64,000 nt of DNA from Chlorokybus atmophyticus (lineage: Eukaryota > Plantae > Mesostigma and Chlorokybus algae): NCBI GenBank assembly GCA_009103225.1, contig RHPI01001965.1, positions 623,580-687,579 of the forward strand, given 5' to 3'. Shown here piece after piece: positions 2,881 through 64,000 of this stretch; position 1 is the stretch's first letter, and every line of letters begins with the position of its first letter. Position numbers and translations under genes: made by a program. The notes below the pieces were generated by a model that worked only from the letters and a program-made list of their open reading frames with translations, was not told the origin of the DNA and ran no database searches.

Positions 2881-5817
2881 TCATACTGCACGCAATCGCC
2901 CAAGGGACTCTGCGTCTGAAGGCTGCCCAGAAGAAGAGCTATGCCCACTACCATAACCAAAGTCATTGGTTACAGTATGCAATGCTTTGCGCTTCTGCTG
3001 CCGACTGCTCTCGACTACGAGTGCTGAGTATGCTGATGACGCTAAGCTGGGCTTGTACTTAGTCCGTACGCCAATGAACACCACAGTGCACAAGAGCACA
3101 GTGATTGCGCACGATCGGAACAAAACAACTGCACGAACGCACGCCATAAGCATGCAATCTTGATACACCAAATGTTGCACAAGTGACACACGTCTCACCT
3201 GCACCAAAATGGTCGTACACAGTGCCACCAATCAACGAACCCACGCCGAAGCCCAGCCCAAATATGCAGCTGGTCATTATGCTCTGCATGGTGCTTTCGA
3301 GCCCAGGCGGCGCCAGCTCAGACGACTGCAATGTGCCGGAGGCATACGCGCAGCCAAATGTGATGCCGTGCAATGGCTCCACGAACAACACCGTCCAGGC
3401 TGAAGGCATGATGGAATAGAAACCCAGCCTGCGCAACACATACCACATTCAACAATGACATGTTGATGCCGGGCAAGCAATGAGTGCTGACCAACACTGC
3501 CAGGAGATGGTACCTTACGAAGTAACAGAGAAGTACCAATACAAGCGTGCCTTGAATGGTCAAGAGTTCAATAATCCTGCCGCTGAAGAACAACACAGGG
3601 ACTTCCGCAATGCATGTGACGGTCAGCGACAGTCCCATCAAGGTTTTGGAAGCGTGGAGCTCCTGCAGGTATAAAAATAGGTAGTTTTCAATTATTCCCA
3701 TGCACGCTCCGATGACGCACATGATGGCGTAGAAGCTCGCGGTGTAGATGTCCTTGACTACGACCGAGAAAGCCTCGATGTAATGTTGCAAAAAGGTCGG
3801 GGCTGCAATTGTGGGCGCTCTTGCTCGCGAGCGCAACATTGGCTCATCATCGCTGGACGTAGCCCCAGAAACGTTGCCATTATTAGACTCGACTTGAAGC
3901 TCTGTTGTCGGGAGCTTCACGAGTGTAACCCTTTTGCGAAACGGATATATTGTCGCCAGCGCCATCGTCATTGCAGCAACTGCGACACACAATCGCGCTT
4001 GCTTGAGCATGACCTTTACACGCCAACACTTCTTATATCGACAATGGATCTATGTTGTTTCCCTATCCTTGACAAAGTGTAATATAAGGTCATCTGGCAG
4101 TGTGCTGCCGAACGACTTGTACTCACTGATGATGTGCATGTAGAAGAGGGAATTCATGGCAGTTGCATCGATGACAGCGCCCGTGATAAGGCTGAAAGTG
4201 CCCCAACCTACGGCTCCCCACGCTCGCTGCCACGCCACATTCGTCAGCTCAACGATATGCGACTGGTGATTTCTCAGCTACTCCCACTGTGCAGCTTCCG
4301 CATGCTACAATGTCTCATCTGCACATGCGCATGAGGTGCTTGCCTTAACTGTGTATAATCAGTTCAAACGAACAAATATGTGTGCAGCTGATGACGATGA
4401 GCGCATGATGACACAACACCCACCTGCTTGCCAAAATCGCCCTTGTTCTCCAGTATGTCGAGCGCCCCCGAGTCCATCAATGGAGCAGCTGTTGAGTTGA
4501 AAGACTGCCGACATAATACATTCTCCGTTAGCGAGACGAACGTCTTTTCTCTCAAACTCAGCTGAGTTGACTGTTGCTTGCCTCAGACCAAATGACAAGC
4601 AGCAGCAGCGGCCAGAAGCCTCGCGGGTATTTGGTGCAGAAGCGTGCCACCGTCGCCACTGCTAGGGTGCCAAAAAGGATGTACTGCAAATATCACATAC
4701 TCAGTGCAAAGCAAGGCACTGTTACATCCACAAGTCGTCACGCAGAACAGCAAGACAACCTTTTTGTGACCAGTTCTGTCGGCGAGCGCACCCCACAACG
4801 GAGCAGTTGTGGCCGAGACAAAAGGGCGTACCTAGTTGCATGCGAACAACAAGCATGAAGTAGCAGCGCGTACAACCGTTGCTTCTGCAGGCCTTCTCAC
4901 ACATTGTCGAACATGGGTGGGGTTCAGGGGTTCAGCTTCATAGCTAATGCAAACTACTAGTTATATACTGCATGCATTGCAACTCCTGCTGAACTTATAC
5001 TCTCAGCCCACTACTGCATATTGCATGCCATGTTCAAGCTCAAACAGAGCTCCAGCCGCTACCTCTTGGGCAAGCTGGTAGCCTAAAACTATTAACTGGA
5101 TGCGTACAACCGTCAAACAGCCCGGGGGGGGGGATGGCATTATATAATGCNNNNNNNNNNNNNNNNNNNNNNNNNNNNNNNNNNNNNNNNNNNNNNNNNN
5201 NNNNNNNNNNNNNNNNNNNNNNNNNNNNNNNNNNNNNNNNNNNNNNNNNNNNNNNNNNNNNNNNNNNNNNNNNNNNNNNNNNNNNNNNNNNNNNNNNNNN
5301 NNNNNNNNNNNNNNNNNNNNNNNNNNNNNNNNNNNNNNNNNNNNNNNNNNNNNNNNNNNNNNNNNNNNNNNNNNNNNNNNNNNNNNNNNNNNNNNNNNNN
5401 NNNNNNNNNNGGGGGGGGGGTATTGGTAACGTATACCTGCTACTTACCCCAGTGAGAATGCCGATGTACGACTCTGATATTCCAATCATCTTGTAGTAAA
5501 CTGCACCCACACAATGCATGCCCAATGGTTAAGTACCATGCTCTAGCATGTCAAAAGCAAGCAGGTGCAAGCATTGAACACGCTCAGGCAGAGGAGCAAC
5601 CATGCTGCAGCCGTGGTCTGTTGTTGCTTCTACCAATACTATGTACAAGTCACAATAGCAAAGAAACAATGCTAGCTGCCAAACCTGGCAGGTAGGGCAG
5701 CACGCACACAAGGCTTCCGAAGTACCCGCAGTATGCTGCCTTCACCACTAGCAGCCGCCTGTTCACGCCTGGCCACCATCCAGCTTGGTGATGATCATGA
5801 TGCTCGTCGTCCACCAT
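2881..5817 (-). CDS. MFSD6-like major facilitator superfamily transporter (multi-exon)
   Basis: Exons give MVDDEH...NRRLLVVKAAYCGYFGSLVCVLPYLP|VYYKMIGISESYIGILTG, WGALADRTGHKKVVL, QRAWGAVGWG, GIIENYLFLYLQELHASKTLMGLSLTVTCIAEVPVLFFSG and VEPLHGITFG...FGLGFGVGSLIGG, with GT-AG junctions. ATG at 5817, stop at 2881. Confidence 0.88.
5151..5410. other. Assembly gap (N run) inside an MFS gene intron
   Basis: 260 Ns. Single Ns also occur at 21263 and 37681. Confidence 0.99.
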
Positions 5818-17809: not shown

Positions 17810-21800
<3,991 letters not shown>

Positions 21801-38874: not shown

Positions 38875-41393
38875 ATGACGCAAAGTGCGCTGTGGAAGCA
38901 CGTCGACATAATAGAGAGAAAGCCTCATGGCAACTTTCGTGTGAGGTGTGTTTATTGCGAGCACGAGTGGACAGGAAGTGTTTCACGTATTGGTGCCCAT
39001 CTGAGTGGTGAACGTGGAGTCACCAAGTGCACAACCCCTCCCGAGGAGATCGTCTTGCAACTTACACAAGCCAAGAAAGACAAGGAGAAAGAGGGTGAGA
39101 AGAGGAGGAGGTTGGACTTGCTAGATCAACTCACATCCGCCATTGGGGATGCTGGTGCAGGTACTTGAATGCATGCGTGCATGCATTGAAGCTTGGCAAG
39201 CAGTGGTGCTGCTCATCACGCATCAAATCAATCACATTGTGCTATAGATTCAAGCGCCACCGTTCCTTCTAGTCAACAACAAACTCTTGATGCAACTTTC
39301 AAGCGTGGGGATAAAGCGCATGTGGATGAAGCCATTGCTCGGTTTTTCTTCAGCAATGGCATCCCCTTCAACGTGGCAAGGTCCCCTTACTTTATCGCAG
39401 CAATGAAAGCGGTTGGCAAGTTTGGCGCTTCATATACCCCTCCCTCATCCGAGGCGCTTCGCACAACCTTGTTGGAAAAGGAGTATGCTAGGGTGAATGG
39501 CGAACTTGCAGTCATCAAGGACTCAACACGAGAAACCTCATGCACAATTGCTAGCGATGGATGGTCGGACACGTCCAACCGTCCATTGTTGAATGTGCTC
39601 ATGGTGAGTCCTAAAGGAGAAGTTTTTCTTCAAGCAATCAACACGGAAGGGAAGGAGAAGACGGCGGAGTATGTATCCGAGCAGCTGATCTCCACCATTG
39701 ATGAAGTAAGTGGTGCACTCGTTCATTGCCATTATAGATTGTGTACACAACCATGCTAAGTAACACATGCAAGCACTGACTGGCAGCACTTTATGAGCAC
39801 ATGCATCACACGCGCATGCTCATGCTCGCACCCGACACAAGTACGCATGCGTGTGACACATGCATGCACTGACTGGCAGCACTTTGTGAGCACATGCATT
39901 ACACGCGCATGCTCATGCTCGCACACAACACAAGTACTTATGCGTGTGACACATGCACGCACTGACTGGCAGCACTTTGTGAGCACATGCATCACACACG
40001 CATGCTCATACACGCACACAACACAAGTACTTATGTGTGTAACTTGCAGGTGGGGTCCGCGAATGTGATACAAGTTGTCATGGACAATGCAAGCGTGTGC
40101 GTAGCTGCTGCACGTCTGATCACTAGCGAATACCCGCACATCACATGGACGCCGTGCACCGCGCATTGCTTGGACTTATTGCTTGAGGATATAGGCAAGT
40201 TGGAGTGGGTTAAAAGCGTGGTGGCTGATGGCAAACGCATAGTGAAGTTCATTACCAACCACCATCGTTCCTTGGCCATCTTCCGCTCCAAAGCCAAGCT
40301 AGAGCTGCTCAAGCCAGGTGAAATAGCATGCGTGCATGTGTGTAGTTAGAGATCAACTTAGTACAAGCGCAAGATTAATGGTAGACAGCAACCATGTGAA
40401 ATTGCAGCTGATTGCCCGCGCATGCATGCATGCTCATGTCATGCGCGTGCTTGTTTGCTCATAGCTACTTGTTGTGCAGGAGATACTCGCTTCGCAACGT
40501 CATTCATAACTCTTGCAAGGCTAGTCGAGGTCAAAGACGCTCTCGACGAGGTGGTGGTGAGCAGGGACTGGAAGGCTTGGGCCGACAAGGGTGTGCATAA
40601 GCAAGAAGCTGCTGCAGTCAGAGCGTTGATCTTGGCACCAGATTTCTGGTCACAAGTGGCATTAGTGAATGCGGTGTCGGCCCCCATCGTGGATCTGCTG
40701 CGTTTGGTTGATGGGAACTTGCCCACCATAGGCAAAGTGTACGCCAAGATGTTTCGTGTTGGCGACCAGCTCAAGCATCTGAAGGGCATGACTGAACAAC
40801 AACGACTTGATGTGCGCGCCTGTTGGAGGGACAGGTGGATCATGCTGCATAGTGACATGCATGCAGCAGGCTATGTGCTGGATCCCGAATATTGGGGTCA
40901 TGAGCAGCACACCAATGAGGAAGTTATGGAAGGCTTTGCAACGATGGTGGAGAGGGTCCTGCAGTCCCATGACAAGGTTGACTTGGCGTTGCAACAGCTA
41001 CACATGTACCGAAGTAAGATGGGGCTGTTCGGCAAAGAGGCAGTGCAACGAGCGGCTCTCACAATGCCCGCGCATGCTTGGTGGCACATGTATGGTGGTA
41101 GTGTACCCGAGTTGCAGCAGCTAGCGATGCGCGTGTTGGCTCAACCATCATCAGCTTGTAGCTGTGAGAGATCCTGGAGCACGTACGACTTCATCCACTC
41201 AAAGAGAAGGAATCGGCTGCAAGCACGCAGGGCAGAGAAGTTGGTGTTTGTCTTCACCAACTTGAGGCAGCTGAAGAAGATCCACAACCCACATTATGTG
41301 CAGGAGTTTGTTGAGTGGGAGGCAGACTCTGATGTGGACGTGTTGTCTAGTAATGATGATGAGGGGGGCGAGTCTGATGATTACTCGGTGTAA
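38875..41393 (+). CDS. hAT transposase (BED finger, DUF659-type catalytic region, hATC dimerisation), 641 aa, join(38875..39160,39248..39705,40050..40317,40480..41393)
   Basis: 1926 nt, all junctions phase-consistent GT-AG, no internal stop. Motifs RCVYC...HL, SDGWSD, VVMDNA, WTPCTAHCLDL, KPGDTRF and SSACSCERSWS. Confidence 0.93.
39765..40045. repeat. 93-bp x3 minisatellite in hAT intron 2
   Basis: ACTGACTGGCAGCACTTT recurs at 39775, 39868 and 39961. Confidence 0.93.
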
Positions 41394-54344: not shown

Positions 54345-54745
54345 CTCTCCAACTGATAGTCGGGTGCCGCCTGTTTAGCTGTAAGTGGCGCTGCCGCCTC
54401 CAACGCTGCCGCCGCCGGTTGGCCCGCCCGAATGTATGAGGCGCGAAAACGAAAATGAGGCGGTTTTGAACGTCTAGAGTCCCGCACTAGAGTCGCACTT
54501 GTAGTGCGTCCTTGCTCCTATGGTTGATGGTACGACTTATGCATTCGTGCCATGCATGCTTCGTACAACCATTGTTACCAATGGTTGTGTCGTAACATTT
54601 ATGGTACGACAGAGGCATCTCTCGTCCAACCCCAGCGATTGCCGTACAATGGCTCTGTCGTACCATCCATGGTACGACAGAGGCATTGCTCGATCAGCCC
54701 AAATGGGAGTTAGCATGCACTCACCCAAACACGCTTCATTGATGG
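54345..54745. promoter_or_regulatory. Divergent intergenic region with ATGGTACGAC repeats
   Basis: ATGGTACGAC at 54527, 54601 and 54669, inverted copy at 54657; ATGGTACGACAGAGGCAT occurs twice. Confidence 0.5.
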
Positions 54746-54749
54746 CCGG

Positions 54750-57700
54750 ATGATGGCACGCAGGGGCACCAGGTCGATGACGGGTCGAATGTCAGGCTTG
54801 ATGGGCCTGGGTTCGACTAGGAGGCGGAGGACCAGGAGTCGGAGGAGGCGGCGGCGGCGGCGGCGGCGGCGTGGAACATCTTGCGAGAAGTTGTGGTCGT
54901 AAGAGTTCAAGCAGCGAAGCCAGCTACTACCGGTCGCCACGTCATGGATCATGGCAGGCGTCAGCAATGGGGCTGTCCAACATGCATCACCAACATTGGA
55001 CAAACCAGCAGGCAAGCCATTAAAGACCATCTTCACATAGAGAGCTGCTTGGTGGCTCGCTTTCTGCAACAGGGAGCGGATCAGGAGCTGCAGTCCTTGG
55101 AGCCCCTTGTCAGAACCATGCGGGACCAATTGCGGCTGTGGGAACAAGCACAAAGGAATGCAGAGGTACGCTCAACAGTCACATGCATTTCCTTGCAAGA
55201 GCAATTTGTTTTTTAGCGCAGTCCATGTGATATATGTAGCGTGGCTGCAGGCCTCCACTATTCACCCATACCCACCCTACAGTCAAGCCAACATTGCGGA
55301 AGCAAGAGCAGATAGACAGAGCTGGGCGGCGGTATGTTGTTGCCAATCTTGCTGTGCATGTTGACTGCAATGTCGGCTCCAATGCATGCCTACCTTTCCA
55401 TGCTAGGATGTGCGTGAGCGTGCGAAGTCGCGCGCGCGTGCCGAACGAAGTAGGCTGGGTTTGAGCACAGGAGCGCGTGGCCATTCGTCCGGCATTCAAC
55501 CAATAGTGCATCAACCAGCAATGACGCAGTCCATGCAATCATTCGTGCATCAACCAGCAATGCCGCAGGTGACTGTTCGAAGCAACCAACTGATGACGGT
55601 GTGACGCAGTTGACTATTGCAATTGCAGTGTCGCAAGCATGCAGCTAACCCACATGTGATTGGTTGACAGCACCACAGTGCACTAAGTCCTGTTGGAGCT
55701 CCTATGCAAGCCTGGATTCAATTCCGTCGACTGGTCCTTCAATCCCACTTGCTGATGGGCGCGGCGGCAATGCGACATCAGTTTAACATGCACGTTGGCC
55801 TGTTAAATTTCGACATGTCCATTGGGGCAGTGGCGCATGATGTGCCCATGGCTCTAGAGTTCCGTGACGAGTCTGCCATTGAGGGTGGCGGGGAGAGTGC
55901 AGCCAATACCACCTTGTCAGCCCCCATGGCTTCCCCTGCTCCATGCAGCCCACGGGCCATTGAGGTAAGTCGCTGTCTTTTATGCTCGTGCCTTGGTAAC
56001 AATGCGTCAGGCACTGCATAAGCTTATATTCGTCCTTTGCAACATTGTGAGCCATCTTATCCTGGGTCCTGTATACAGCCCCCCTTGCTGCATGCACAAG
56101 TGGTCTCACCTGCAGCTCCTGCTCCCCTCCCAGCCAGAGCGCAACCACCTTCCGCGGCACCAGTCCTTCGTGCACTGCCATCTCCTCCACGAGCAGCACC
56201 GGTGATTGCGGGGCAACAATCCTTCTTGCCGCCACCGGCGAGCCTACAGCACAATGCAACAACCGATGTGGCTTCTGCACCTACCTTACCCCACCCGCTG
56301 CAAGTTGAAGCCGGCAGGCTGCCCCAAACTCAGGTACTTTATCAGTCATTGTGACTCTTGCCGTTCACAGTTGGACACACCATGTGAGTGCTGTATGCGC
56401 ATGCAGCAGGGGTCACCACCTGCCAGCGAGTCATCAGAGGAGCTGGCCGCAACCCGCATACGGCCATTAGTCATGCTAGGTGGCCAGCTCGCCTCATGGG
56501 ACCACTTCAATGCGCCAACGGATGGTAACTGCTTCTACCATTGTGAATTTCGCGCCAGGCCATCCATAGCGCAAAGTGTCTTGGATGATCACAAGTGCCT
56601 CAGCTCGAGCAGATTTTGGGCCATGCTGGACACCATGGACGACGACGGCAGGGGGCACACTCTCCGCAAAATCACCGCCAAGGCTGTCGATGCAGGCGTG
56701 GCGAGCAGAATCCTAGACTTCTGCAGAGCCACTGGTGCCGCGGGAGAGATGGCGCAGTATTACGACAAACTGCCTGCGACCATGTTGGCTGATATCAACT
56801 GCAACATTGACCCAGCCATGGCCAAGGTGCGACAGATCGTGCGGAGAAAAGATGTGTACGTCGAGCACCTGCAGATGGCCATGTTTGCCAACAAGCTGGG
56901 CTTGTTGATTGGCTTCGTGACCGTTCAGCGCGAGCATGGGGAGTGGGTGCCACGGCCCGGCAGCGCAGTCTGGGTTGGAAATAAAGAAGCCCCCAACTCA
57001 GTCCTGGTGGTGGGCAACACTGCTCCTGATGAGCCAGAAGCACACTTTTGGCTCCTCAAGCCTGCAAGCACCGAACAGTGGTCGTGGCCTATGCATGAAG
57101 TGCCACCGGAGGTAACACACCTGATCGGAGAGTGGCGGCATGGCGTTGCCAATTCCCCGCTACCACCGGCTGTGACCCAGAGTGCTGCGCCAACGCCTCA
57201 GGCCTCGCCTTCGTGTGCTAGGCAAGAAGTAGCCGAGTGTTCTGCACATCCTGCCTCCCCTCAACCACAGCCACATGCTCGCAATCCCAATTCAGCACCC
57301 TCCCTTCCTGCCGCGGAGACTCACTTGCCACCGCACTCTGACCATCCGGAGGCATCTCCATCAAGAAGCAGCTGTAGCTCGCCCTCTCCCTCTAAGCTTG
57401 CCACATTGATCCCAGCCTGTCTTGTTGGTAAAGAGATTGATCGAGGTGTCCTGAAAGCTGCGCTGAAAGACAAAGGCTTCATGCTCGACCTCATGAAGCA
57501 ACATGAGGTCGTGGAGGAACGGGAGGCAACCAACAAGCGCAAGGCTGTGGAGCAAGAAGATAACGCCTTACCTCCTCTGAGTGACAGTGCCACGGAGAGC
57601 GCCTGCCAGGATGTGCAGGGTGACAAAAAAAAAAAGAAGAAGGTTGTTGGAACAAAGGACGCTGACAGGACCAAAAAAGGAAAGGTGAGGCATCGTTACA

Positions 57701-58795
57701 ACATTAGAAGAAGCACAGCGCCTTGAAGCCTCACTGGGGCTGACTGTGTGTCCTGAGTAGGCACAGGCGGGTTTACAGCGTCAAGTGGCTGCTCAGCATC
57801 GTCCAGAGAGACAGCCGGTGCGGCACGAGCTGCCTAAGCTCAAAGCACCGACGCGCAGACGCTTTGGGGGGCTGACTCGTAGTGCAAAGGAGTTGATCAC
57901 CCTACAGTACGCCCAAGACGCGCTGCATCACCGCATGCGGCATGCCTCGAGGTGGGTGACGAAAGTTTGCAATAAGTGGGAGCAAACGCGGAGAATGCGG
58001 TCTAAACAGACCTCTGGGGATTGGCCGTGGTTGGAACCCATACACGATATGGCCATCCGTAGTACGTTGTTGCCCCTCGCCGTCCTCGATATGATGGTGT
58101 TGTTGCTGCCGCAGCACCCCGGCAATGTGCAAGAGCTATCTGCGGAGCAGAACTTCGACCTGCTGCAGCAGATGTACCTGTCGATGTCGACTAATGCGGG
58201 TCGAGATGTGTGCCACTACCTGAGCAAACATACTGGGTGGCAAGTAAAACCATTCGAGCTGTACTTGGCATGCTTTGGCTGGCAGTGGCTGTATGTCATA
58301 CGGCACGTCGAGCTGATTCTGTGGAAGCTCGAAGAAAATGACGATGCGGGGGAGTACACGAGTGACGACAGCCATGTCGAGGGCCTGGATGAACGCACGC
58401 TGGACGAGACCACCAAGATTAGCAGGTGGTGTATGGCGGCAGATGGGCGTCAGGTGATCGAGCAGGCAGTGGAGCGTTATGCTGCGCCATTCAGATGGGA
58501 GTCGCTACGCCTGCGACGCGATAACAGAGTTTGGTGGCAGAGGCAGCTTGCACACCCGCGTGCACCATGTGTGCTGATTTGTCGCATTGAAGAGCCACCC
58601 CCCCCAGCGGATGGGGAGACGCCCTGTTGCAAGAAAGCGATGTGCCATGTCTGCATCATAGCACATCAGAAGACTGTGGCATGTAAATCAAAGAATCTAC
58701 AAGCGTGTCCATTCTGTAAGCAACCTCACCCGTTTTGGTCGCCACGCCTGATGCAAGACGCCAACGTGTCGGCGGTGATTTGGCCCCCGCCTTGA
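54750..58795 (+). CDS. OTU-like cysteine protease plus C-terminal RING-like finger (multi-exon; 5' exons unresolved)
   Basis: APTDGNCFYH (OTU Cys box), VEHLQMAMFANKLGLLI and EAHFWLL (His box). A phase-0 intron 57685-57778 joins it to an exon ending CVLIC...PCCKKAMCHVC...CPFC. Confidence 0.7.
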
Positions 58796-59039: not shown

Positions 59040-59274
59040 GTATTACTCTACGATCGTGGTAGTATGCGAGTATCCTTGTTCTGTAGTACCATTAACAGAT
59101 AGAGTACCATTCATGTTGATGTAGTACCATGCATGGTACTGCAATAGCGTATAAGGTACAGTCGTGCTTCGCTTGAAGTTTGACCCATTTAGGGTTCGTA
59201 AGCTGGCAACCCTAAATTGATGCCCATACCCTAAAGTCTCGATTTGTGGGCAGCCGTGCCGATTCCTATTTTGC
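59040..59274 (+). promoter_or_regulatory. Putative promoter with GTACCAT repeats and three telo-box-like motifs
   Basis: AGTACCATGCATGGTACT palindrome at 59123-59140; TTTAGGGTT at 59188, AACCCTAAA at 59208 and ACCCTAAA at 59228. Confidence 0.45.
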
Positions 59275-61003
59275 ATGATGTCGGCGGCAGCAGTTGAATC
59301 ACCCTCACCTAGGAGACCATGCTTGGTGTGCCCACAATGCAATGCATACGTATGTGCCAATGGCCGTAGGCAGCAAATGCGAGCACACGTGACCGAATGC
59401 CAGCGAGTGCAGACAGTGTGCCACGGTTTTAGTGCTGCTTGCTGGCATCACACCACACACAATGTCGACGTGTTTGGCTGCCGCCGCGGCCAAGTGCTGT
59501 GCAAGGAACCCGAGTTTTTCCATTGCGTGCAGTGCGTGTGCGAATCGTGCTTGCGCTCATGCTTCGAGTGGCGAGGGGAACCCATGCGCTTCTTCACATG
59601 CACAACACCGGGACATGTGGTTAGTGGACAGGTGGTGGATGCTGTGGAGGTAACCCACAAGAGTGGACCGCGACGTATCACTGCATGTTATGTTGGGCGT
59701 ATTCTTATTTCATGCATGTTGAAGCTGTTGTCGCATTCAGAGCAGTCTTGCACGGTGTGGGCGTGGGCAGTTCCATCCCCCGGCCGCTGTAGAGGAGGCA
59801 GACCATCGACCGTTGGACAGCGCACTACATCGGCTGCGGAATGCAGTTAAGTTGGGATGCGAGCAGCTGATCGGTGTGAGTGTCATGGTGCATTGGCCGC
59901 TGGATGGGGAATGGTATGCGGGCGTTGTGGAATCATTCAAGCAAGCGTCAGGTCAGCATCGCTTCGTGGCGTGCGAGATTGAGGACGCATCATATATGCA
60001 TGGTGCAATGGAAAATGTCTTTGCAGGGCAGCACCGTATAGTATTCGATGACGGTGATCGACCACAAACCATCAACTTCAAAGGGCACAACGTATTCGCG
60101 TACACATCAGTTGACGGGGCACGCCATGTTCTGCGCGTCGGAGGGGAGAACGTCAGTCGCAAAGTAAGCCCGAACGGCATCATTGTTAGTCCCTGGCCAG
60201 CACCACGGCCAGCCTTGACCACATACACGCCATTTGACAACAAGCTGGGACGCACACGCAGACCAAGGGCACTCGACCTATTCTGCGGCGGTGGCGGTGC
60301 CAGTGTCGGTCTATACCACGCAGGCTTTGACGTGACCGGGATGGACATAAGTCCCTCCTCTGAGTACCCGCTGCCCTTCATACACCGCGATGTATGCACC
60401 CTGAGTGCAGGAGAGCTGAGCGAGTACGAGCTCATCTGGGCCAGTCCACCATGCCAGGCCTATTCAGGTGCTATCCCGGCACCTCAACGGGCGGCACATG
60501 GCACATCCTGGAGACACCAGGATATGATACCGCTCGTCCGACGTCTGCTGCTTGCAAGCCAGGTCAAGTTTGTGATTGAGAATGTGCCAGGAGCAGCTTC
60601 CTCATTCAGACCCAATCTGTCCCTTTGTGGCACGATGTTTGGCCTATCAACTTTCCGACACCGTCTGTTTGAGACACAGCCAGTGGTAGCTACCCCACCA
60701 GCACGCTGCTCGCACGCGGGCAAGGCAGTTGGACTGCTATCGCCGCACCTGTCCGCTAGCGCGAAGAAGACAATCGTGACATCAAACGCGCCACAGCAGA
60801 TGTACCCGGTCTATGGCCTTCCAAGCACCAGGGGCGGCATTGCTGCGTGGCAAACAGCGCTGGGAGTGCCATGGATGACCTCGGCCGTTTCCATAGCGAA
60901 TGCAGTTCCTCCCGCAATGGCGGAGTGCATAGGGCGTCTCATGCTTGAAACAATGGATATGCGCTGTGACTACCCTCCTGTGTCATGGAACTATGAGGCT
61001 TGA
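59275..61003 (+). CDS. Zn-finger/Cys-rich + Tudor + C5 cytosine DNA methyltransferase fusion, 520 aa, join(59275..59649,59741..59951,60027..61003)
   Basis: 1563 nt, phase-consistent GT-AG introns. Tudor: LIGVSVMVHWPLDGEWYAGVVESF...HRIVFDDGD. MTase motif I LDLFCGGGG, IV ASPPCQAYS, VI IENV, VIII FRHRLF and X ANAVPP. Confidence 0.88.
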
Positions 61004-61206
61004 GTGTGGTGCACTGTATTGATGCTTAATGCCACACGGCGGACTGATTGTTGAATGTTGCATGGATCATTCGATTGTGGTGACAGTTGTGCAGTGACAG
61101 CTGCCCGGTATTGTACACGTCCACATGCAAAAGTCTTAGCATACGATTAGCAATGCCTAACTGACTGATATGCTCCAAACTCAGAGTAGTGAGACAAGTA
61201 CATGTG

Positions 61207-63992
61207 TCACGTGGAAGTGCAGTGAACGTTCACCCAATACTTGCCCTCTTGTACACGGGCGCTGTCCTTGTCAAACATGGGGAGCAGCTGGACAATGCCT
61301 TTTACTTGCTCCAGAGTCACGACATCGAGATGTGGACCGCCTCGACGCTTTTCCCATTCCAGAGCGATGCACTTTGTGTCGCTCGTCACATCCAGCTTCG
61401 TGTACCAGCGGACAAACACGACCTCCTTCCACACGCGCTCGCCGCTACCACCCCACACCACCACGCGCAGAAAAAGGAGTGCCTGAGCCCACCACGTCAC
61501 GTTCACACCGTCCTCATCACCTTCCAACTCAAGTGTAGAGAACCAAGGCCGCCCATGGAACATCCCAGTTGCGCGCGCCATGCTGACTCCTGATGTCATG
61601 TACACCGCTGCGCCTCCGTTCACCACGCGAACAGCACGCCACCCGTCGGCCAACTCCAGTTGTTCCCTCCTCAACCAGCTGTCCAGGGTGGCAGGCAGCT
61701 TGTCGGCAAATGGAGTCTTCAAGGCGACTTGGCGGCTACGCGCAGATCCGCTCCAGTACGGGCTGGACTCCCTCCTTGTCAGCACATCCATCCGTAGCAA
61801 CTTGTCCGTCTTCTCCATGACATTACAGCACTGCTGCCGCGCCTGCGCCATGACCGAGCGCATCTCGGGATCCACGACCATGCCATCCTCTCTCACATAT
61901 TCCGCACAGCTCCATGCCTTCAGGATACGTGCCTGGTAGTCCCGGTTGTTGCCACCACGCGCCCACCGTTTGATATTTTGGGCGTGCGTCTGCTCCATGC
62001 GGTTGGCGCTGAACCAATCTGGGTGTCCACTGCTGACAATTGCCGGCCCAAAATGAGTGAGCTGATGCATCTTCTCGATCTTCCAACCTGACTTCTGTGC
62101 AGAATATGACGACAGTAGCGGATGCAACACTGCAGCTTTGAAGGCAGCCAGCTCGTTGTCGGCTGTGGTCAGGGTCTCTCTTGTGTGTTCATGCGCCTTC
62201 AGCAACTTCTTGTTCCACTGGGCAAGCGATGCGGCAGCAATGGTGAAGAAATCGTTGCCCTCACTGTCGAGCAGCAAACCGTCTGCGAGGACCGGCAGCA
62301 GCTGCAGCACCGCCACTTTCTCCACCACCTGAAAGGAGTGGTCGGACAGGAAGAAATCTACTGTGCTTGTGGGTGCCTTGAAGTGCGAAACCCGCAGAGT
62401 CGCCTTGCATGCATTCAGCCTGTGCACATCTGCTCGTGAGCACGTGTTGTTGGCTTTTGTGTTCAACACAAAAGCAACACCAAAGACGTGCCTGGCCTGC
62501 AGAATCTGTCTCGTGGATGGACGCATTCGTTCCTTCGCGGCGTCGTACACAGCAGCAAGCAGGTGGTCAATGATGCCTCCCAGCACATGCATTGCGTCAG
62601 GGGCAAGACGAGAGTAGCAGTCAGCTCCCGGCACCCGCGACTGTCGCCAACCCCACAGTGCATTCTGTTGCCAAACCACATTGCCTGGTTTCACGGAAAG
62701 CCATTCATCCTCACGAATGCCGGTAATTTGACCATTACCTCCTCGACATGCATGGAGTGCTGCTCTTTGAAAGCCTTGGCTGTCTGGCGTGCATTCCTAA
62801 CACCGCTATGCAGGTCCGCCCGCAGCTGACGTATTGCTGGTGTGTAGAAGGCCTCGGTTCTCAATTCCCGGTCCTCATCCATCTCCAACAGATCTGATTT
62901 GGTGACGAGACAAACATCGCAAGGATGTCGTGTTTGGTTGCCCGACACAGTGCGTGCGAGTGTGGCAGTCTCCTACAACACGACAAACTCAGATGTTCTA
63001 CTGACAACATCCTCCATGCACTGTTTGCTGGCGGGCTGCATCCGGTTACAACCATTCATGCCCACTACCTGCAAATCGCTGATGTAGTTGGCAAGCGCGG
63101 GAAACACACGACGCTCGATGCCATTCGGGTCGATGAGCTGCAGACCTTCCCAACTCGCCCGCTTCACATCCCCTAACACTACATTCAAAGCGTCATGAAA
63201 AATCTCACGTTTCCGAATGGAGAACGATTCCTTGCCCTGCGCCCAGGTGGGATGCCCGGCCACTGCGTGAACCACCGGCAGAAGCGCTATCATAACAACC
63301 CCCATGTTGCTAGCATACATGTCCCAACTGTAGTTGGCAAGCGATGCCATCAGAGGGTAGCCAGAGCGCTTGCCCGCGCTGTCCAGCGTGGTCTTGTCAC
63401 TGTACAGAATGGCAGGCGCCAAGTAGGACGCTTCCCCCACCTCTCTCCTCAAATCCACCTCCACATCCTTCCACCAATCGCCCGTGGAAGGATGGCCAAA
63501 GCTGTGCTCGTCACCAGTGTACTGGAGATTGAAGCCATTGGCGGCATGTGGATTGCCATACAACCGCGCGAGCCATACCTGCTCCGACCAAGAGCATTAC
63601 TTACTATGCTGGCCTCAGAATAGATACTGCATCGATACTGCATTAGGTACTGCATTTCACAGACCTTGGCCGGCATATATGTGACGCAGATGTCCTGATC
63701 CTCAGGGTCTCCAGGCTTGCGCAGGTCAGCCGTCACGTAGTTTTGATACGGCAGCACACTCGCATGTGCATATGTGACATGGCTCTAATAGTTGAAGCAC
63801 ATGCACCGCACACCGTGAACACACCTCAAACTGAGAGAAAGCAATCGTGGTCCGGAGGTAGCTGGCCGCATGCACACCGGTCTCCCACTGGAGCTTTTCC
63901 GTCAGGAAGTGTGCATTTCGGATGCACTTGATGATCCGCCCCATGTCGGAGGCCGACAGGCCTTGGCCGTTGTTGCACTGCACGAATGCCAC
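61207..63992 (-). CDS. Plavaka-type transposase (spliced, 5' end outside the window)
   Basis: STGDWW, APAILYSDKT, GYPLMASLAN, REIFHDAL, RRVFPALANYISDLQ|E, CDVC, PDAMHVLGG and KMHQLTHF...G...MEQTH...K...NNRD fit the Plavaka consensus pattern. No stops in the modelled exons. Confidence 0.85.
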
Positions 63993-64000
63993 TGCACTGC

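What the first reader, a model, noticed from the sequence alone, without database searches (positions are those of the whole stretch)
59275..61003. Reader-writer fusion: Zn-finger-Tudor-phage-type C5 DNA methyltransferase next to a Plavaka transposase
Seen: two short GT-AG introns (59650-59740, 59952-60026) splice three exons into one intact 520-aa ORF. It contains a C2HC and Cys-rich module, a PDS5/MSH6-like Tudor domain with aromatic residues (W, W, Y, F), and a compact C5-MTase with all catalytic motifs (FxGxGG, PCQ, ENV, RxR, NAVPP). Its stop lies only 203 bp from the stop of a convergent Plavaka transposase. Known: the LDLFC..GG / GFDV.G.DI / SPPCQAYS / LCG.MFGL...RHRLFE pattern with a very short target-recognition region resembles actinobacterial and phage orphan methylases rather than DNMT1/MET1, CMT or DRM. 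DNMT capture has been reported for retrotransposons, and fungal Plavaka and KDZ DNA transposons are linked to TET/JBP genes. Inference: a horizontally acquired methylase gained introns and a histone-mark reader and is carried by a DNA transposon, possibly writing 5mC on itself or on marked chromatin. I do not know of this architecture being described.
Basis: partly seen in the sequence, partly recalled or inferred. Interest (0 to 1): 0.95.

Follow-up and report, generated by a model that had tools for sequence, protein, structure and literature searches.

The report
Tudor-fused viral-type DNA cytosine methyltransferase
A eukaryotic gene appears to join a histone-mark-reading Tudor domain to a small DNA cytosine methyltransferase of the kind carried by phages and giant viruses, tail to tail with a Plavaka transposase. 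That would be an unusual way of aiming DNA methylation at marked chromatin, but expression, activity and transposon-cargo status are not shown.

Summary
Window 59741-61003 (+) is one open frame encoding an RDM15/PDS5-type Tudor domain followed by a complete compact C5 cytosine methyltransferase. All family-invariant catalytic residues are present.

- **MTase family.** It belongs to a ~230-aa family common in actinophages and many bacteria. By score and shared indels, its nearest relatives lie on giant-virus-like contigs. It does not group with DNMT1 or DNMT3.
- **Uniqueness.** No Tudor-MTase fusion of this family appeared among the 150 best-scoring matches listed from 1.84 billion protein representatives.
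- **Exon 1.** The Cys-rich "zinc finger" has no homologue and no confident fold. Its Cys count is at the edge of chance.
- **Intron 1.** An upstream exon is needed, but the intron's position is unproven.
- **Intron 2.** It is in frame and stop-free. It is a diverged tandem duplicate of the next 75 nt. Removing it recreates the aromatic-x-D-x-D methyl-lysine motif.
- **Transposon cargo.** This cannot be decided here. There is one copy in the window, no element ends were found, and the right end lies outside the window.

Verdict: a probably real reader-writer chimera, a new variant of a known kind, of moderate to high interest.

The parts
59275..59649 (+). Putative exon 1: ATG start, 125 codons, 15 Cys + 7 His. 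The domain is unassigned and it is not shown to belong to the gene.
   Evidence: ORF and start codon. Best codon-usage frame of six. No family or PDB hit. AF2 pLDDT 39.5. Cys count about the 95th percentile of chance frames.
59650..59740 (+). Putative intron 1 (91 nt, GAG|GTAACC ... TTCAG|AG). It shifts the frame from exon 1 to exon 2.
   Evidence: An upstream exon is needed because the Tudor frame has no ATG before 59885. 213 alternative frame-keeping GT-AG pairs exist.
59741..59951 (+). Exon 2: linker plus the N-terminal half of the Tudor domain, with cage residues Trp and Tyr.
   Evidence: phmmer hit to 7DE9_A, E = 3.7e-4, query residues 37-76 of window:59741-61000. Residue roles from PMC8184781.
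59952..60026 (+). Putative intron 2, or a retained in-frame 25-codon insert. It is a diverged tandem duplicate of 60027-60101.
   Evidence: GT..AG ends. In frame and stop-free. 33-35/75 identity to the next 75 nt against a null 99th percentile of 30. At protein level 9/25 aa match, and both copies begin GQHR and end NVFA.
60027..61003 (+). Exon 3: C-terminal half of the Tudor (F-D-D-G-D), a linker, the compact C5-MTase and the TGA stop.
59849..60103 (+). RDM15/PDS5-type Tudor domain. It spans exon 2, the 75-nt insert or intron, and exon 3.
   Evidence: After removal of 59952-60026 the aromatic-x-D-x-D motif aligns with Y641/D643/D645 of RDM15.
60260..61000 (+). C5 cytosine methyltransferase domain. 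Catalytic Cys codon at 60452-60454. Motifs I, IV, VI, VIII and X present. Short target-recognition region. C-terminal DYPP..W tail.
   Evidence: PF00145 at 26.2 bits. PHROG_363 at 1e-27. Invariant residues kept. pLDDT >90. C5-MTase fold.
61004..61206 (.). 203-nt spacer between the two convergent stop codons. No CACTA-type terminus on the + strand within it.
61207..64000 (-). Plavaka-type transposase gene, cut by the window end. Its coding sequence is spread over all three frames in several open segments, by introns or frameshifts (undetermined). Only 62973-63563 matches the Pfam model.
   Evidence: PF18759 at 5.7e-23. Eleven open segments of >=60 codons across three frames. A canonical GTAAGT..CAG candidate intron is seen. 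The 495-aa C-terminal ORF has no homologue.
59085..59140 (.). Cluster of AGTACCAT repeats ending in the palindrome GTACCATGCATGGTAC, 135-190 nt upstream of the start codon. It could be a promoter element or a transposon subterminal-type motif (speculative).
54485..54700 (.). CACTAG followed by three ATGGTACGAC repeats and the palindrome GTACCATCCATGGTAC. It is a candidate left end of an EnSpm/Plavaka-type element that would enclose 54.5 kb to beyond 64 kb (speculative).
   Evidence: GC content rises from 0.43-0.51 to 0.55-0.57 from about 54 kb onward.
56206..58795 (+). Two long intron-less ORFs upstream on the same strand: 506 aa with a DGNCFYH motif and a Lys-rich tail, and 336 aa with a Cys-rich C-terminus. 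Function is unknown. They could be further cargo or unrelated neighbours.
   Evidence: No Pfam or PDB hit. Codon usage is coding-like.

Best explanation
This is an intact nuclear gene of an unidentified eukaryote. It encodes a chimeric de novo-type 5-methylcytosine writer.

The catalytic half is a compact (~250 aa) C5 DNA methyltransferase. Its family is abundant in actinophages and many bacteria and has a derived branch in giant viruses. The eukaryote most likely obtained it by horizontal transfer, probably through a giant virus.

Fused upstream in the same frame is an RDM15/PDS5/MSH6-type Tudor domain. Its methyl-lysine cage (Trp, Tyr, Phe) and the two Asp that hold a monomethyl-ammonium are intact once the 75-nt segment is removed.

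Proposed mechanism (inferred): the Tudor docks on a low-methylation-state histone lysine, H3K4me1-like. It thereby tethers the otherwise non-selective mini-methylase to that chromatin, where it methylates cytosines, plausibly at CpG.

A Cys/His-rich N-terminal exon may add a further module but is unverified. The Plavaka transposase next door may or may not be functionally linked.

Shown: the open frame, the domain identities, the conserved catalytic residues and the family placement. Inferred: splicing, expression, catalytic activity, the histone target and the route of transfer.
For: - One frame carries the Tudor and the MTase whether or not the 75-nt segment is spliced.
- MTase identity: PF00145 above threshold, PHROG_363 at 1e-27, all invariant family residues kept, pLDDT >90 and the C5-MTase fold.
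- Family distribution: 309 phage records, at least 488 IMG/VR contigs, 220 tblastn-confirmed stretches in prokaryotic genomes, the 80 listed spanning many bacterial phyla, 4152 representatives at E<=1e-3.
- Giant-virus branch. The highest single-domain scores (E = 1e-54 to 1e-58, against about 1e-39 for bacterial forms) go to P0005-P0008.
  - These share an insert between motifs IV and VI, a Q-x-x-P-V-Y-G motif and a DYPP tail with the window protein.
  - Relatives sit beside a D5 primase-helicase, a PolB, and SNF2/RING/kinase genes on dense intron-less contigs.
  - The best BFVD hit is a Pithovirus LCPAC201 methylase, E = 1.8e-17 at 36% identity.
- Tudor: 7DE9 at E = 3.7e-4, with W616 and Y623 equivalents aligned. 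Splicing places F-D-D-G-D where RDM15 has Y641-x-D643-x-D645.
- CpG is depleted (observed/expected 0.63-0.89) and TpG/CpA is in excess across the whole window. This is consistent with a CpG-methylated genome.
- Sister-clade enzymes carry an MBD in the target-recognition slot, which points to CpG-methylated DNA as the clade's substrate context.
Against: - There are no expression data and no orthologue, so selection cannot be measured.
- No close relative (>50% identity) exists in the protein collections searched.
- Tudor support rests on one PDB hit of modest E-value. No Pfam Tudor model passes. The AF2 Tudor region scores only pLDDT 50-63.
- The RDM15 residues that read H3R2 (E647, Q654) are not kept, so the histone target is uncertain.
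- The 75-nt segment may be retained. That would place a diverged duplicate inside the Tudor.
- The target-recognition region is very short and lacks the MBD of the nearest relatives, so DNA specificity and even activity are unknown.
- NJ bootstrap for the giant-virus grouping is weak: 61/200 and 88/200.
Confidence: 0.6

Rival explanations
1. The gene is cargo of a giant Plavaka (EnSpm/CACTA-type) DNA transposon running from about 54.5 kb to beyond the window end. As an accessory gene it would modify the element's own chromatin or the host's. It would parallel the DNA-methylase-SET accessory gene of red-algal Plavaka elements and the TET/JBP genes of fungal ones.
For: - Tail-to-tail arrangement with 203 nt between the stop codons.
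- No CACTA terminus lies in the spacer, while CACTAG plus subterminal-like repeats lie at 54485-54700.
- A related palindrome cluster sits just upstream of the gene.
- There is a GC-richer block from about 54 kb onward, holding long intron-poor ORFs.
- Precedents: 10.1101/2025.02.11.637652, PMC12730594, and the Plavaka-flanked gene clusters of Amoebidium, PMC11244446.
Against: - Each gene occurs once in the window.
- No inverted-repeat partner is available because the right end is outside the window.
- The two motif clusters share only a 16-20-nt palindrome, and CATGCATG palindromes are common elsewhere in the window.
- None of the MTase relatives examined has a Plavaka neighbour.
- No Plavaka relative was found in viral contigs.
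- The 495-aa ORF nearest the gene is not demonstrably transposase.
Confidence: 0.27
2. The MTase is a decaying remnant of an endogenized giant-virus or other horizontally acquired fragment. The upstream Tudor-like and Cys-rich stretches would be fortuitous or belong to another gene, so there is no functional reader-writer protein.
For: - The nearest relatives are on giant-virus-like contigs.
- Exon 1 has no support beyond codon usage.
- The position of intron 1 is unproven.
- The Tudor is interrupted by a 25-codon duplicate.
- No expression data exist.
Against: - The 396-codon frame 59813-61003 is intact, and every invariant catalytic residue is kept.
- The Tudor match lies in the same frame, directly upstream of the MTase.
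- All five methyl-lysine-binding positions are preserved on both sides of the insert. Preservation of that kind is not expected in neutral sequence.
- Codon usage of exons 1 and 2 is as coding-like as that of exon 3's neighbours.
Confidence: 0.1
3. The gene is real, but the 75-nt segment is not spliced. The protein then carries a duplicated beta-hairpin that disables or alters the Tudor, and the enzyme acts as an untargeted or differently targeted methylase.
For: - The segment is in frame and stop-free.
- Its in-frame codon-usage score is the highest of the six frames of that segment.
- It is clearly a tandem duplicate of coding sequence.
Against: - It begins with GT and ends with a pyrimidine-rich TTTGCAG.
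- Its length (75 nt) matches intron 1 (91 nt) and a candidate intron of about 76 nt in the neighbouring gene.
- Its removal recreates exactly the aromatic-x-D-x-D spacing of RDM15, and the copy inside the segment has lost that motif.
Confidence: 0.15

Closest known systems
Compact C5 DNA methyltransferases of actinophages and bacteria (PHROG_363; for example the gene annotated 'DNA methyltransferase' gp82 of Mycobacterium phage Pukovnik, NC_011023)
   Same: Same catalytic family. Identity is 34-40% over 70-82% of exon 3. The motif order and the very short target-recognition region are the same.
   Different: The phage and bacterial forms are stand-alone ~210-250-aa proteins. They have no reader domain, no introns, no insert between motifs IV and VI and no DYPP tail.
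Giant-virus branch of the same family (metagenomic P0005-P0008, P0010, P0011, P0019; Pithovirus LCPAC201 methylase A0A481Z4Z4)
   Same: Highest scores. Shared insert I-P-x-x-Q-R-x-x-H-G-x-x-W, shared Q-x-x-P-V-Y-G motif and shared DYPP tail.
   Different: Most of these carry a methyl-CpG-binding domain inserted at the target-recognition slot: PF01429, 27-38 bits against a cut-off of 21. The window protein lacks that insert. It instead has an N-terminal Tudor, sits in a eukaryotic intron-containing gene, and is not on a dense viral contig.
N4CMT of bdelloid rotifers (PMC8885841, PMC10406627)
   Same: The same logic: a horizontally acquired prokaryotic-type DNA methyltransferase fused to a eukaryotic methyl-lysine reader, giving a chromatin-guided writer (titles and abstracts seen).
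   Different: N4CMT makes N4-methylcytosine and uses a chromodomain.
DNMT5b enzymes with N-terminal Tudor domains in microeukaryotes (10.1101/2021.06.11.447926)
   Same: A Tudor and a C5-MTase in one polypeptide.
   Different: DNMT5 is an ancestral eukaryotic family with an SNF2 ATPase and a long MTase domain. The window enzyme is a mini-methylase of viral/prokaryotic type without an ATPase.
Accessory genes of Plavaka/KDZ transposons: PAG2 (DNA methylase PF01555 + SET) in red algae (10.1101/2025.02.11.637652); TET/JBP in fungi (PMC12730594)
   Same: A DNA- or chromatin-modifying gene next to a Plavaka transposase.
   Different: PAG2 is an N6/N4-type methylase with a SET domain, and TET/JBP is an oxidase. 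Neither is a C5-MTase with a Tudor. Cargo status is shown for those genes but not here.
DNMT-carrying retrotransposons of dinoflagellates and charophytes (PMC5890265)
   Same: Mobile elements that encode a C5-MTase.
   Different: Those are retrotransposons with DNMT3-like or lineage-specific DNMTs inside the element ORFs. Here the neighbour is a DNA transposase and the MTase is of phage/giant-virus type.
RDM15/PDS5C Tudor domain (PDB 7DE9; PMC8184781)
   Same: The best solved relative of the reader domain. Cage positions W616, Y623 and Y641 (Phe here) and D643 and D645 are kept.
   Different: The H3R2-binding E647 and Q654 are not kept. RDM15 carries no enzyme and acts through RNA-directed DNA methylation.

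Membership tests
C5 cytosine DNA methyltransferase superfamily (PF00145) | Pfam model matched above its gathering score | tested here: met
   26.2-27.1 bits against 22, but only profile positions 3-116 of 324. TIGR00675 scores far below its cut-off.
C5 cytosine DNA methyltransferase superfamily (PF00145) | Catalytic motifs I (FxGxG), IV (PCQ with the nucleophilic Cys), VI (ENV), VIII (RxR) and X (PP) in canonical order | tested here: met
   All invariant and near-invariant columns of the 81-sequence alignment are kept. C338 of the 520-aa model lies at 60452-60454.
C5 cytosine DNA methyltransferase superfamily (PF00145) | Rossmann-type C5-MTase fold | tested here: met
   pLDDT >90 over the domain. 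Foldseek hits M.HaeIII, DNMT1 and DNMT3 at E about 1e-8, probability 1.00.
C5 cytosine DNA methyltransferase superfamily (PF00145) | Transfers a methyl group to C5 of cytosine in DNA | not testable with these tools
   No biochemical or methylome data. Window-wide CpG depletion is only consistent with 5mC in the genome.
Compact phage/bacterial C5-MTase family (PHROG_363) | Significant match over the whole domain, including the C-terminal half | tested here: met
   E = 1.3e-27, residues 70-303 of exon 3. 34-40% identity to 309 phage records.
Giant-virus branch of that family | Clade-specific insert between motifs IV and VI, the QxxPVYG motif and the C-terminal DYPP tail | tested here: met
   Alignment A2. 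Tree support is weak: 61/200 bootstraps.
Giant-virus branch of that family | MBD-like insert at the target-recognition position | tested here: not met
   The window protein has about 24 residues there and no PF01429 hit. The relatives do hit PF01429.
Giant-virus branch of that family | Location on a dense, intron-less viral genome | tested here: not met
   The window carries hAT and Plavaka transposons and an MFS gene fragment; the model of this gene needs introns; Pfam scans of the window's larger ORFs found no viral hallmark gene.
Canonical eukaryotic DNMTs (DNMT1/MET1, DNMT3/DRM, CMT, DNMT5) | MTase domain groups with these families by sequence | tested here: not met
   The family profile against PDB hits DNMT1 only at motif I (22 positions), and no DNMT3 appears in the 60 best matches listed. 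The best hits are bacterial MTases and DNMT2 at about 1e-8. No proper phylogeny with eukaryotic DNMTs could be built.
RDM15/PDS5/MSH6-type Tudor | Sequence similarity to a solved member | tested here: met
   7DE9_A at E = 3.7e-4, 40 aligned residues. No Pfam Tudor model passes; the best is PF21743 at E = 0.22.
RDM15/PDS5/MSH6-type Tudor | Three-residue aromatic cage plus two Asp coordinating the monomethyl-lysine | tested here: met
   W177 and Y184 align directly. F202, D204 and D206 fall in register only after removal of 59952-60026. Register deduced.
RDM15/PDS5/MSH6-type Tudor | H3R2-binding Glu and Gln (E647, Q654) | tested here: not met
   The corresponding positions are Pro and Gly in the model.
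RDM15/PDS5/MSH6-type Tudor | Binds a methylated histone lysine | not testable with these tools
   No binding data are available.
Zinc finger (C2HC or other) | Match to a known zinc-finger family, or a confident zinc-binding fold | tested here: inconclusive
   No hit. pLDDT 39.5. The Cys count is not clearly above chance.
Cargo gene of a Plavaka (EnSpm/CACTA) transposon | Lies between the element's terminal inverted repeats | tested here: inconclusive
   A candidate CACTAG end lies at 54485, but there is no partner because the right end is outside the window.
Cargo gene of a Plavaka (EnSpm/CACTA) transposon | Repeated copies in which the gene and the transposase stay linked | not testable with these tools
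   The host genome is not in any searchable collection. The only close Plavaka relative is on a 552-nt contig.

The most novel reading that the evidence does not exclude
A giant Plavaka DNA transposon has captured a giant-virus-derived mini C5-methylase and welded it to an H3K4me1-type Tudor reader, one of whose introns arose by tandem duplication. The element would then carry its own chromatin-guided 5mC writer. The writer would act either on the element itself or on host chromatin bearing the mark. This would be the first DNA-transposon-borne reader-writer for 5mC, and a three-way exchange between virus, transposon and host.
Probability: 0.2. Interest if true: 0.85.

Novelty: new variant of a known kind. 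Interest (0 to 1): 0.6.

Why it matters
Eukaryotic 5mC writers are usually traced to a few ancient families: DNMT1, 3, 4, 5 and 6.

This case is a phage/giant-virus mini-methylase that has acquired a eukaryotic gene structure and an H3K4me1-type reader. It would be a second, independent example, after rotifer N4CMT, of a horizontally acquired DNA methylase being wired into histone-mark reading. This time the product would be 5mC.

It also points to a giant-virus clade of methylases that pairs the same catalytic core with an inserted methyl-CpG-binding domain. That suggests repeated invention of reader-writer enzymes around this core.

If the gene proves to be Plavaka cargo, it would add a 5mC writer to the set of epigenetic accessory genes of these elements, alongside TET/JBP and the N6/N4-methylase-SET gene.

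The 75-nt segment is also a clean candidate for an intron born from a tandem duplication.

Tried and rejected
1. **Host organism.** Not identified. There are no tRNA or Rfam hits. The other large ORFs gave only MFS, hAT and DUF659. No near-identical protein exists in any collection.
2. **Further copies or linked relatives.**
   - The JGI metagenome scan found only MTase-domain relatives at <=64% over short stretches.
   - The viral-contig scan for the transposase found nothing.
   - tblastn of all local genes against the window and five relatives' loci found only the MTase.
3. **Terminal inverted repeats.** Local alignment of 54.4-54.8 kb against 58.8-59.3 kb and 61.0-61.2 kb gave only a 16-20-nt palindrome. 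Similar CATGCATG palindromes occur elsewhere in the window.
4. **Exon 1.** Pfam at E<=10, NCBIfam, PHROGs, PDB and a single-sequence AF2 run were all uninformative.
5. **C-terminal half of the Tudor searched alone against PDB.** No hit; the query was too short.
6. **Neighbouring 506-aa and 336-aa ORFs.** No significant Pfam or PDB hit. The OTU-like reading of the DGNCFYH motif rests on my own recollection only.
7. **Fold comparison.** It could not separate bacterial from eukaryotic MTases; all sit at 12-16% identity.
8. **NJ bootstrap.** Too weak to fix the branching order.
9. **Spliced protein as a query.** It could not be given to the search or folding tools because it has no reference. Those runs used the unspliced 420-aa reading or single exons instead.
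10. **Rejected reading: the window region as a giant-virus insertion.** No viral hallmark genes were found and introns are present.
Full report
**1. What is in the sequence**

A 191-codon ORF starts at ATG 59275. A 396-codon ORF runs from 59813 to 61003 in another frame.

Joining 59275-59649, 59741-59951 and 60027-61003 gives 1563 nt, or 520 codons, with no internal stop.

A note on procedure. I made that joined translation once, in a script, to test the finding's own splice model and to number residues. The script printed it and saved it as a working file. No tool predicted the two introns, and I found later that 'intron 2' coincides with an in-frame insertion.

**2. The methyltransferase half is solid**

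- PF00145 is matched above its gathering score, though only over motifs I-VI.
- PHROG_363 'DNA methyltransferase' is matched over the whole domain at 1e-27.
- In an 81-sequence family alignment, the window protein keeps every invariant and near-invariant column: motif I, the P-P-C of motif IV, E-N-V, R-x-R and the P-P of motif X.
- AlphaFold2 with that alignment models residues ~160-420 of the unspliced reading at pLDDT >90.
- Foldseek returns C5-MTases only: M.HaeIII, DNMT1 and DNMT3, all at 12-16% identity.

**3. Which methyltransferase family**

The family is compact, about 210-250 aa, with a very short target-recognition region.

- It is abundant in phages. tblastn finds 309 GenBank phage records at 34-40% identity. 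By host genus: 186 Mycobacterium, 52 Streptomyces, 28 Paenibacillus, 22 Arthrobacter, plus Gordonia, Vibrio and Rhodococcus.
- At least 488 IMG/VR contigs carry it, mostly 30-60 kb in size.
- In prokaryotic genomes, 220 candidate stretches were confirmed. The 80 loci listed span many phyla: Chloroflexota, Actinomycetota, Acidobacteriota, Pseudomonadota, Bacillota and others.
- An exhaustive HMMER scan of 1.84 billion representatives gave 4152 hits at E<=1e-3, none above 50% identity.
- A profile of the family against all PDB sequences reaches only about 1e-8: an E. coli MTase (3G7U), M.HaeIII and DNMT2. It touches DNMT1 at motif I alone, and no DNMT3 appears in the 60 best matches listed.

**4. 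A giant-virus branch**

The best single-domain hits are P0005-P0008 and P0010, at E = 1e-47 to 1e-58, against about 1e-39 for bacterial forms. With the window protein they share three features absent from the bacterial 230-aa forms:

- an insert between motifs IV and VI;
- a Q-x-x-P-V-Y-G motif;
- a C-terminal DYPP..aromatic tail.

Their contigs are dense and intron-less and carry giant-virus-type neighbours:

- a D5 primase-helicase, an aquaporin and a PLOD-type glycosyltransferase (L005);
- a 1173-aa family-B DNA polymerase on a 245-kb contig (L002);
- SNF2, RING and kinase genes (L004).

The best match in the viral structure library is the C5 methylase of Pithovirus LCPAC201, E = 1.8e-17 at 36% identity.

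A neighbour-joining tree places the window protein as sister to this branch, but with weak bootstrap: 61/200, and 88/200 for the wider long-form group. I therefore rate a giant-virus route as likely but not proven.

Most members of this branch carry a methyl-CpG-binding domain inserted at the target-recognition slot: PF01429, 27-38 bits against a cut-off of 21. The window protein lacks that insert.

**5. The Tudor domain**

phmmer of the unspliced reading against PDB gives one significant non-MTase hit: 7DE9 chain A, E = 3.7e-4. According to its paper, this is the Arabidopsis RDM15 (PDS5C) Tudor bound to H3K4me1.

That paper names W616, Y623 and Y641 as the aromatic cage. D643 and D645 are the monomethyl-ammonium ligands, and E647 and Q654 are the H3R2 ligands.

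- In the printed alignment, the window's H-W-P-L-D Trp and E-W-Y-A-G Tyr fall on W616 and Y623.
- The alignment stops one residue before Y641.
- In the spliced model the next residues are F-D-D-G-D, which is aromatic-x-D-x-D in exact register.
- The H3R2 positions are not kept.
- No Pfam Tudor model passes.
- The AF2 Tudor region, modelled from a single sequence with the insert retained, reaches only pLDDT 50-63.

I accept the Tudor call, with a methyl-lysine cage of the low-methylation-state type and an unknown histone target.

**6. The introns**

*Intron 1.* The Tudor frame opens only after a stop at 59720, and its first ATG (59885) lies inside the domain. Residues upstream of that ATG still align with RDM15. 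An upstream coding exon is therefore required.

The nearest candidate is the ATG-initiated ORF at 59275. Its codon usage is the best of six frames and slightly above the 95th percentile of random windows. However, 213 GT-AG pairs keep the frame. TTCAG|AG, 91 nt) is the most canonical-looking, not the only one.

*Intron 2* is different in kind. It is 75 nt, in frame and stop-free. It is a diverged tandem copy of the following 75 nt.

- Identity is 33-35/75, against a null of 19.3 +/- 4.2 with a 99th percentile of 30.
- At protein level 9/25 aa match, and both copies begin GQHR and end NVFA.
- The copy inside the segment has lost the D-D-G-D motif.
- The segment begins with GT and ends with TTTGCAG.

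It is therefore either an intron born from a tandem duplication or a retained 25-residue duplicate inside the Tudor. Only transcript data can tell.

**7. Exon 1**

The 'C2HC and Cys-rich module' is not verified.

- There is no match in Pfam (even at E<=10), NCBIfam, PHROGs or PDB.
- AF2 gives pLDDT 39.5.
- It has 15 Cys in 125 residues. The 95th percentile of the maximum Cys count per 125 codons across the 85 open stretches of the window is 14.8, and three stretches reach 17 or more.

**8. The transposase and the cargo question**

PF18759 (Plavaka) matches 62973-63563 on the minus strand at 5.7e-23. The gene runs off the window end.

Its coding sequence lies in several open segments across all three frames. 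At least one canonical candidate intron of about 76 nt is visible. Whether the remaining frame changes are introns or frameshifts cannot be told without relatives. The only close relative in the collections is a 134-aa fragment at 69% identity on a 552-nt contig.

The 495-aa ORF that ends 203 nt from the MTase stop has no Pfam hit and no homologue. Its assignment to the transposase rests on adjacency alone.

For cargo status:
- No CACTA terminus lies in the 203-nt spacer.
- CACTAG at 54485 is followed by three ATGGTACGAC repeats and a GTACCATCCATGGTAC palindrome.
- A related cluster (three AGTACCAT repeats plus GTACCATGCATGGTAC) sits 135-190 nt upstream of the gene's ATG.
- GC content rises from about 54 kb onward.

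Against cytosolic... against cargo status:
- Each gene occurs once in the window.
- The right end is missing.
- The two motif clusters share nothing beyond the palindrome.
- CATGCATG palindromes are frequent elsewhere in the window.
- None of the MTase relatives examined has a Plavaka neighbour.

I cannot decide this with the window alone.

**9. Literature context**

- Fungal Plavaka/KDZ elements carry TET/JBP genes (PMC12730594).
- Red-algal giant Plavaka elements carry three accessory genes, one combining a PF01555 DNA methylase with a SET domain (10.1101/2025.02.11.637652).
- Amoebidium has Plavaka-flanked gene clusters, and 10 of its 18 DNMTs lie in endogenized giant viruses (PMC11244446).
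- DNMTs occur in dinoflagellate and charophyte retrotransposons (PMC5890265).
- Tudor domains occur on some DNMT5b enzymes (10.1101/2021.06.11.447926).
- Rotifer N4CMT joins a bacterial N4-cytosine methylase to a chromodomain (PMC8885841).

Against this background, each element of the finding has a precedent. The specific combination does not: an RDM15-type Tudor with an actinophage/giant-virus mini C5-methylase.

None turned up in the searches either. Among the 150 best-scoring matches listed from the exhaustive scan, every match began within or just before the MTase part of the query.

**10. Mechanism and verdict**

Most likely (confidence about 0.6) this is a functional nuclear gene. Its product would use the Tudor to dock on a mono- or low-methylated histone lysine, and the mini-methylase would deposit 5mC nearby, plausibly at CpG.

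- The genome shows CpG depletion with TpG/CpA excess throughout the window.
- The sister clade pairs the same core with an MBD.

Cargo of the Plavaka element is a live alternative (about 0.27) and would raise the interest.

I rate the finding as a new variant of a known kind, with interest 0.6.
- the zinc finger and the transposon linkage are unsupported;
- splicing is unproven;
- Tudor-DNMT enzymes already exist;
- reader fusions to horizontally acquired MTases already exist.

Noticed in passing
P0005, P0006, P0008, P0010, P0124 (loci L001, L005): The nearest relatives, on giant-virus-like contigs, carry a methyl-CpG-binding domain (PF01429, 21-38 bits against a cut-off of 21; P0124 falls just below the cut-off) inserted between motifs VIII and IX, where the target-recognition domain normally sits. 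This would be a reader-inside-writer design in giant viruses. I found no description of it in one library search.
   Followed up: partly
window 59952-60101: The putative intron 2 is one unit of a diverged 75-nt tandem duplication of Tudor-coding sequence. The GT and AG ends lie at the unit boundaries. It is a candidate example of an intron created by tandem duplication.
   Followed up: yes
P0001, P0002, P0004, P0009, P0121: Proteins of about 450 aa that consist of two tandem copies of the compact C5-MTase domain. They gave the top scores in both protein searches. Their origin was not examined.
   Followed up: no
window 56206-57726 (+): Intron-less 506-codon ORF with a D-G-N-C-F-Y-H motif that recalls the OTU cysteine-protease catalytic motif (my recollection only). 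It also has a Pro/Ser-rich middle and a Lys-rich tail. No Pfam or PDB hit.
   Followed up: partly
window 57785-58795 (+): Intron-less 336-codon ORF with a Cys-rich, RING-like C-terminus. The only match is an insignificant hit to a TRIM RING (E = 0.96).
   Followed up: partly
window 54485-54700 and 59085-59140: Two clusters of ATGGTAC/GTACCAT repeats, each holding a GTACCAT(C/G)CATGGTAC palindrome. The first follows a CACTAG. They could be transposon subterminal repeats or regulatory sites.
   Followed up: partly
window 39193-41393 (+): A hAT-type transposase in two ORFs: DUF659 (2e-21) and the hAT dimerisation domain (1e-12). The ORFs are separated by three 93-nt tandem repeats at 39760-40043.
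   Followed up: no
window 20864-21330: Long array of an 8-nt tandem repeat: 41 overlapping 160-nt copies, up to 99% identical, lying inside a 222-codon ORF.
   Followed up: no
whole window: CpG observed/expected is 0.63-0.89, with TpG/CpA at 1.24-1.59 and GpC at 1.17-1.55 in every 4-kb block. This pattern is consistent with long-term CpG methylation of this genome.
   Followed up: partly
window 5151-5410: A run of 260 N (assembly gap), plus single N at 21263 and 37681.
   Followed up: no
window 3318-4010 (-): An exon-sized fragment of an MFS_1_like transporter gene (PF12832, 1.3e-18). It is the only evident host-type gene found in the window.
   Followed up: no
L001 460-1488: The 342-aa gene upstream of the MBD-methylase P0008 ends with motifs that recall mono-ADP-ribosyltransferases (my recollection only). 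No Pfam hit is on record.
   Followed up: no
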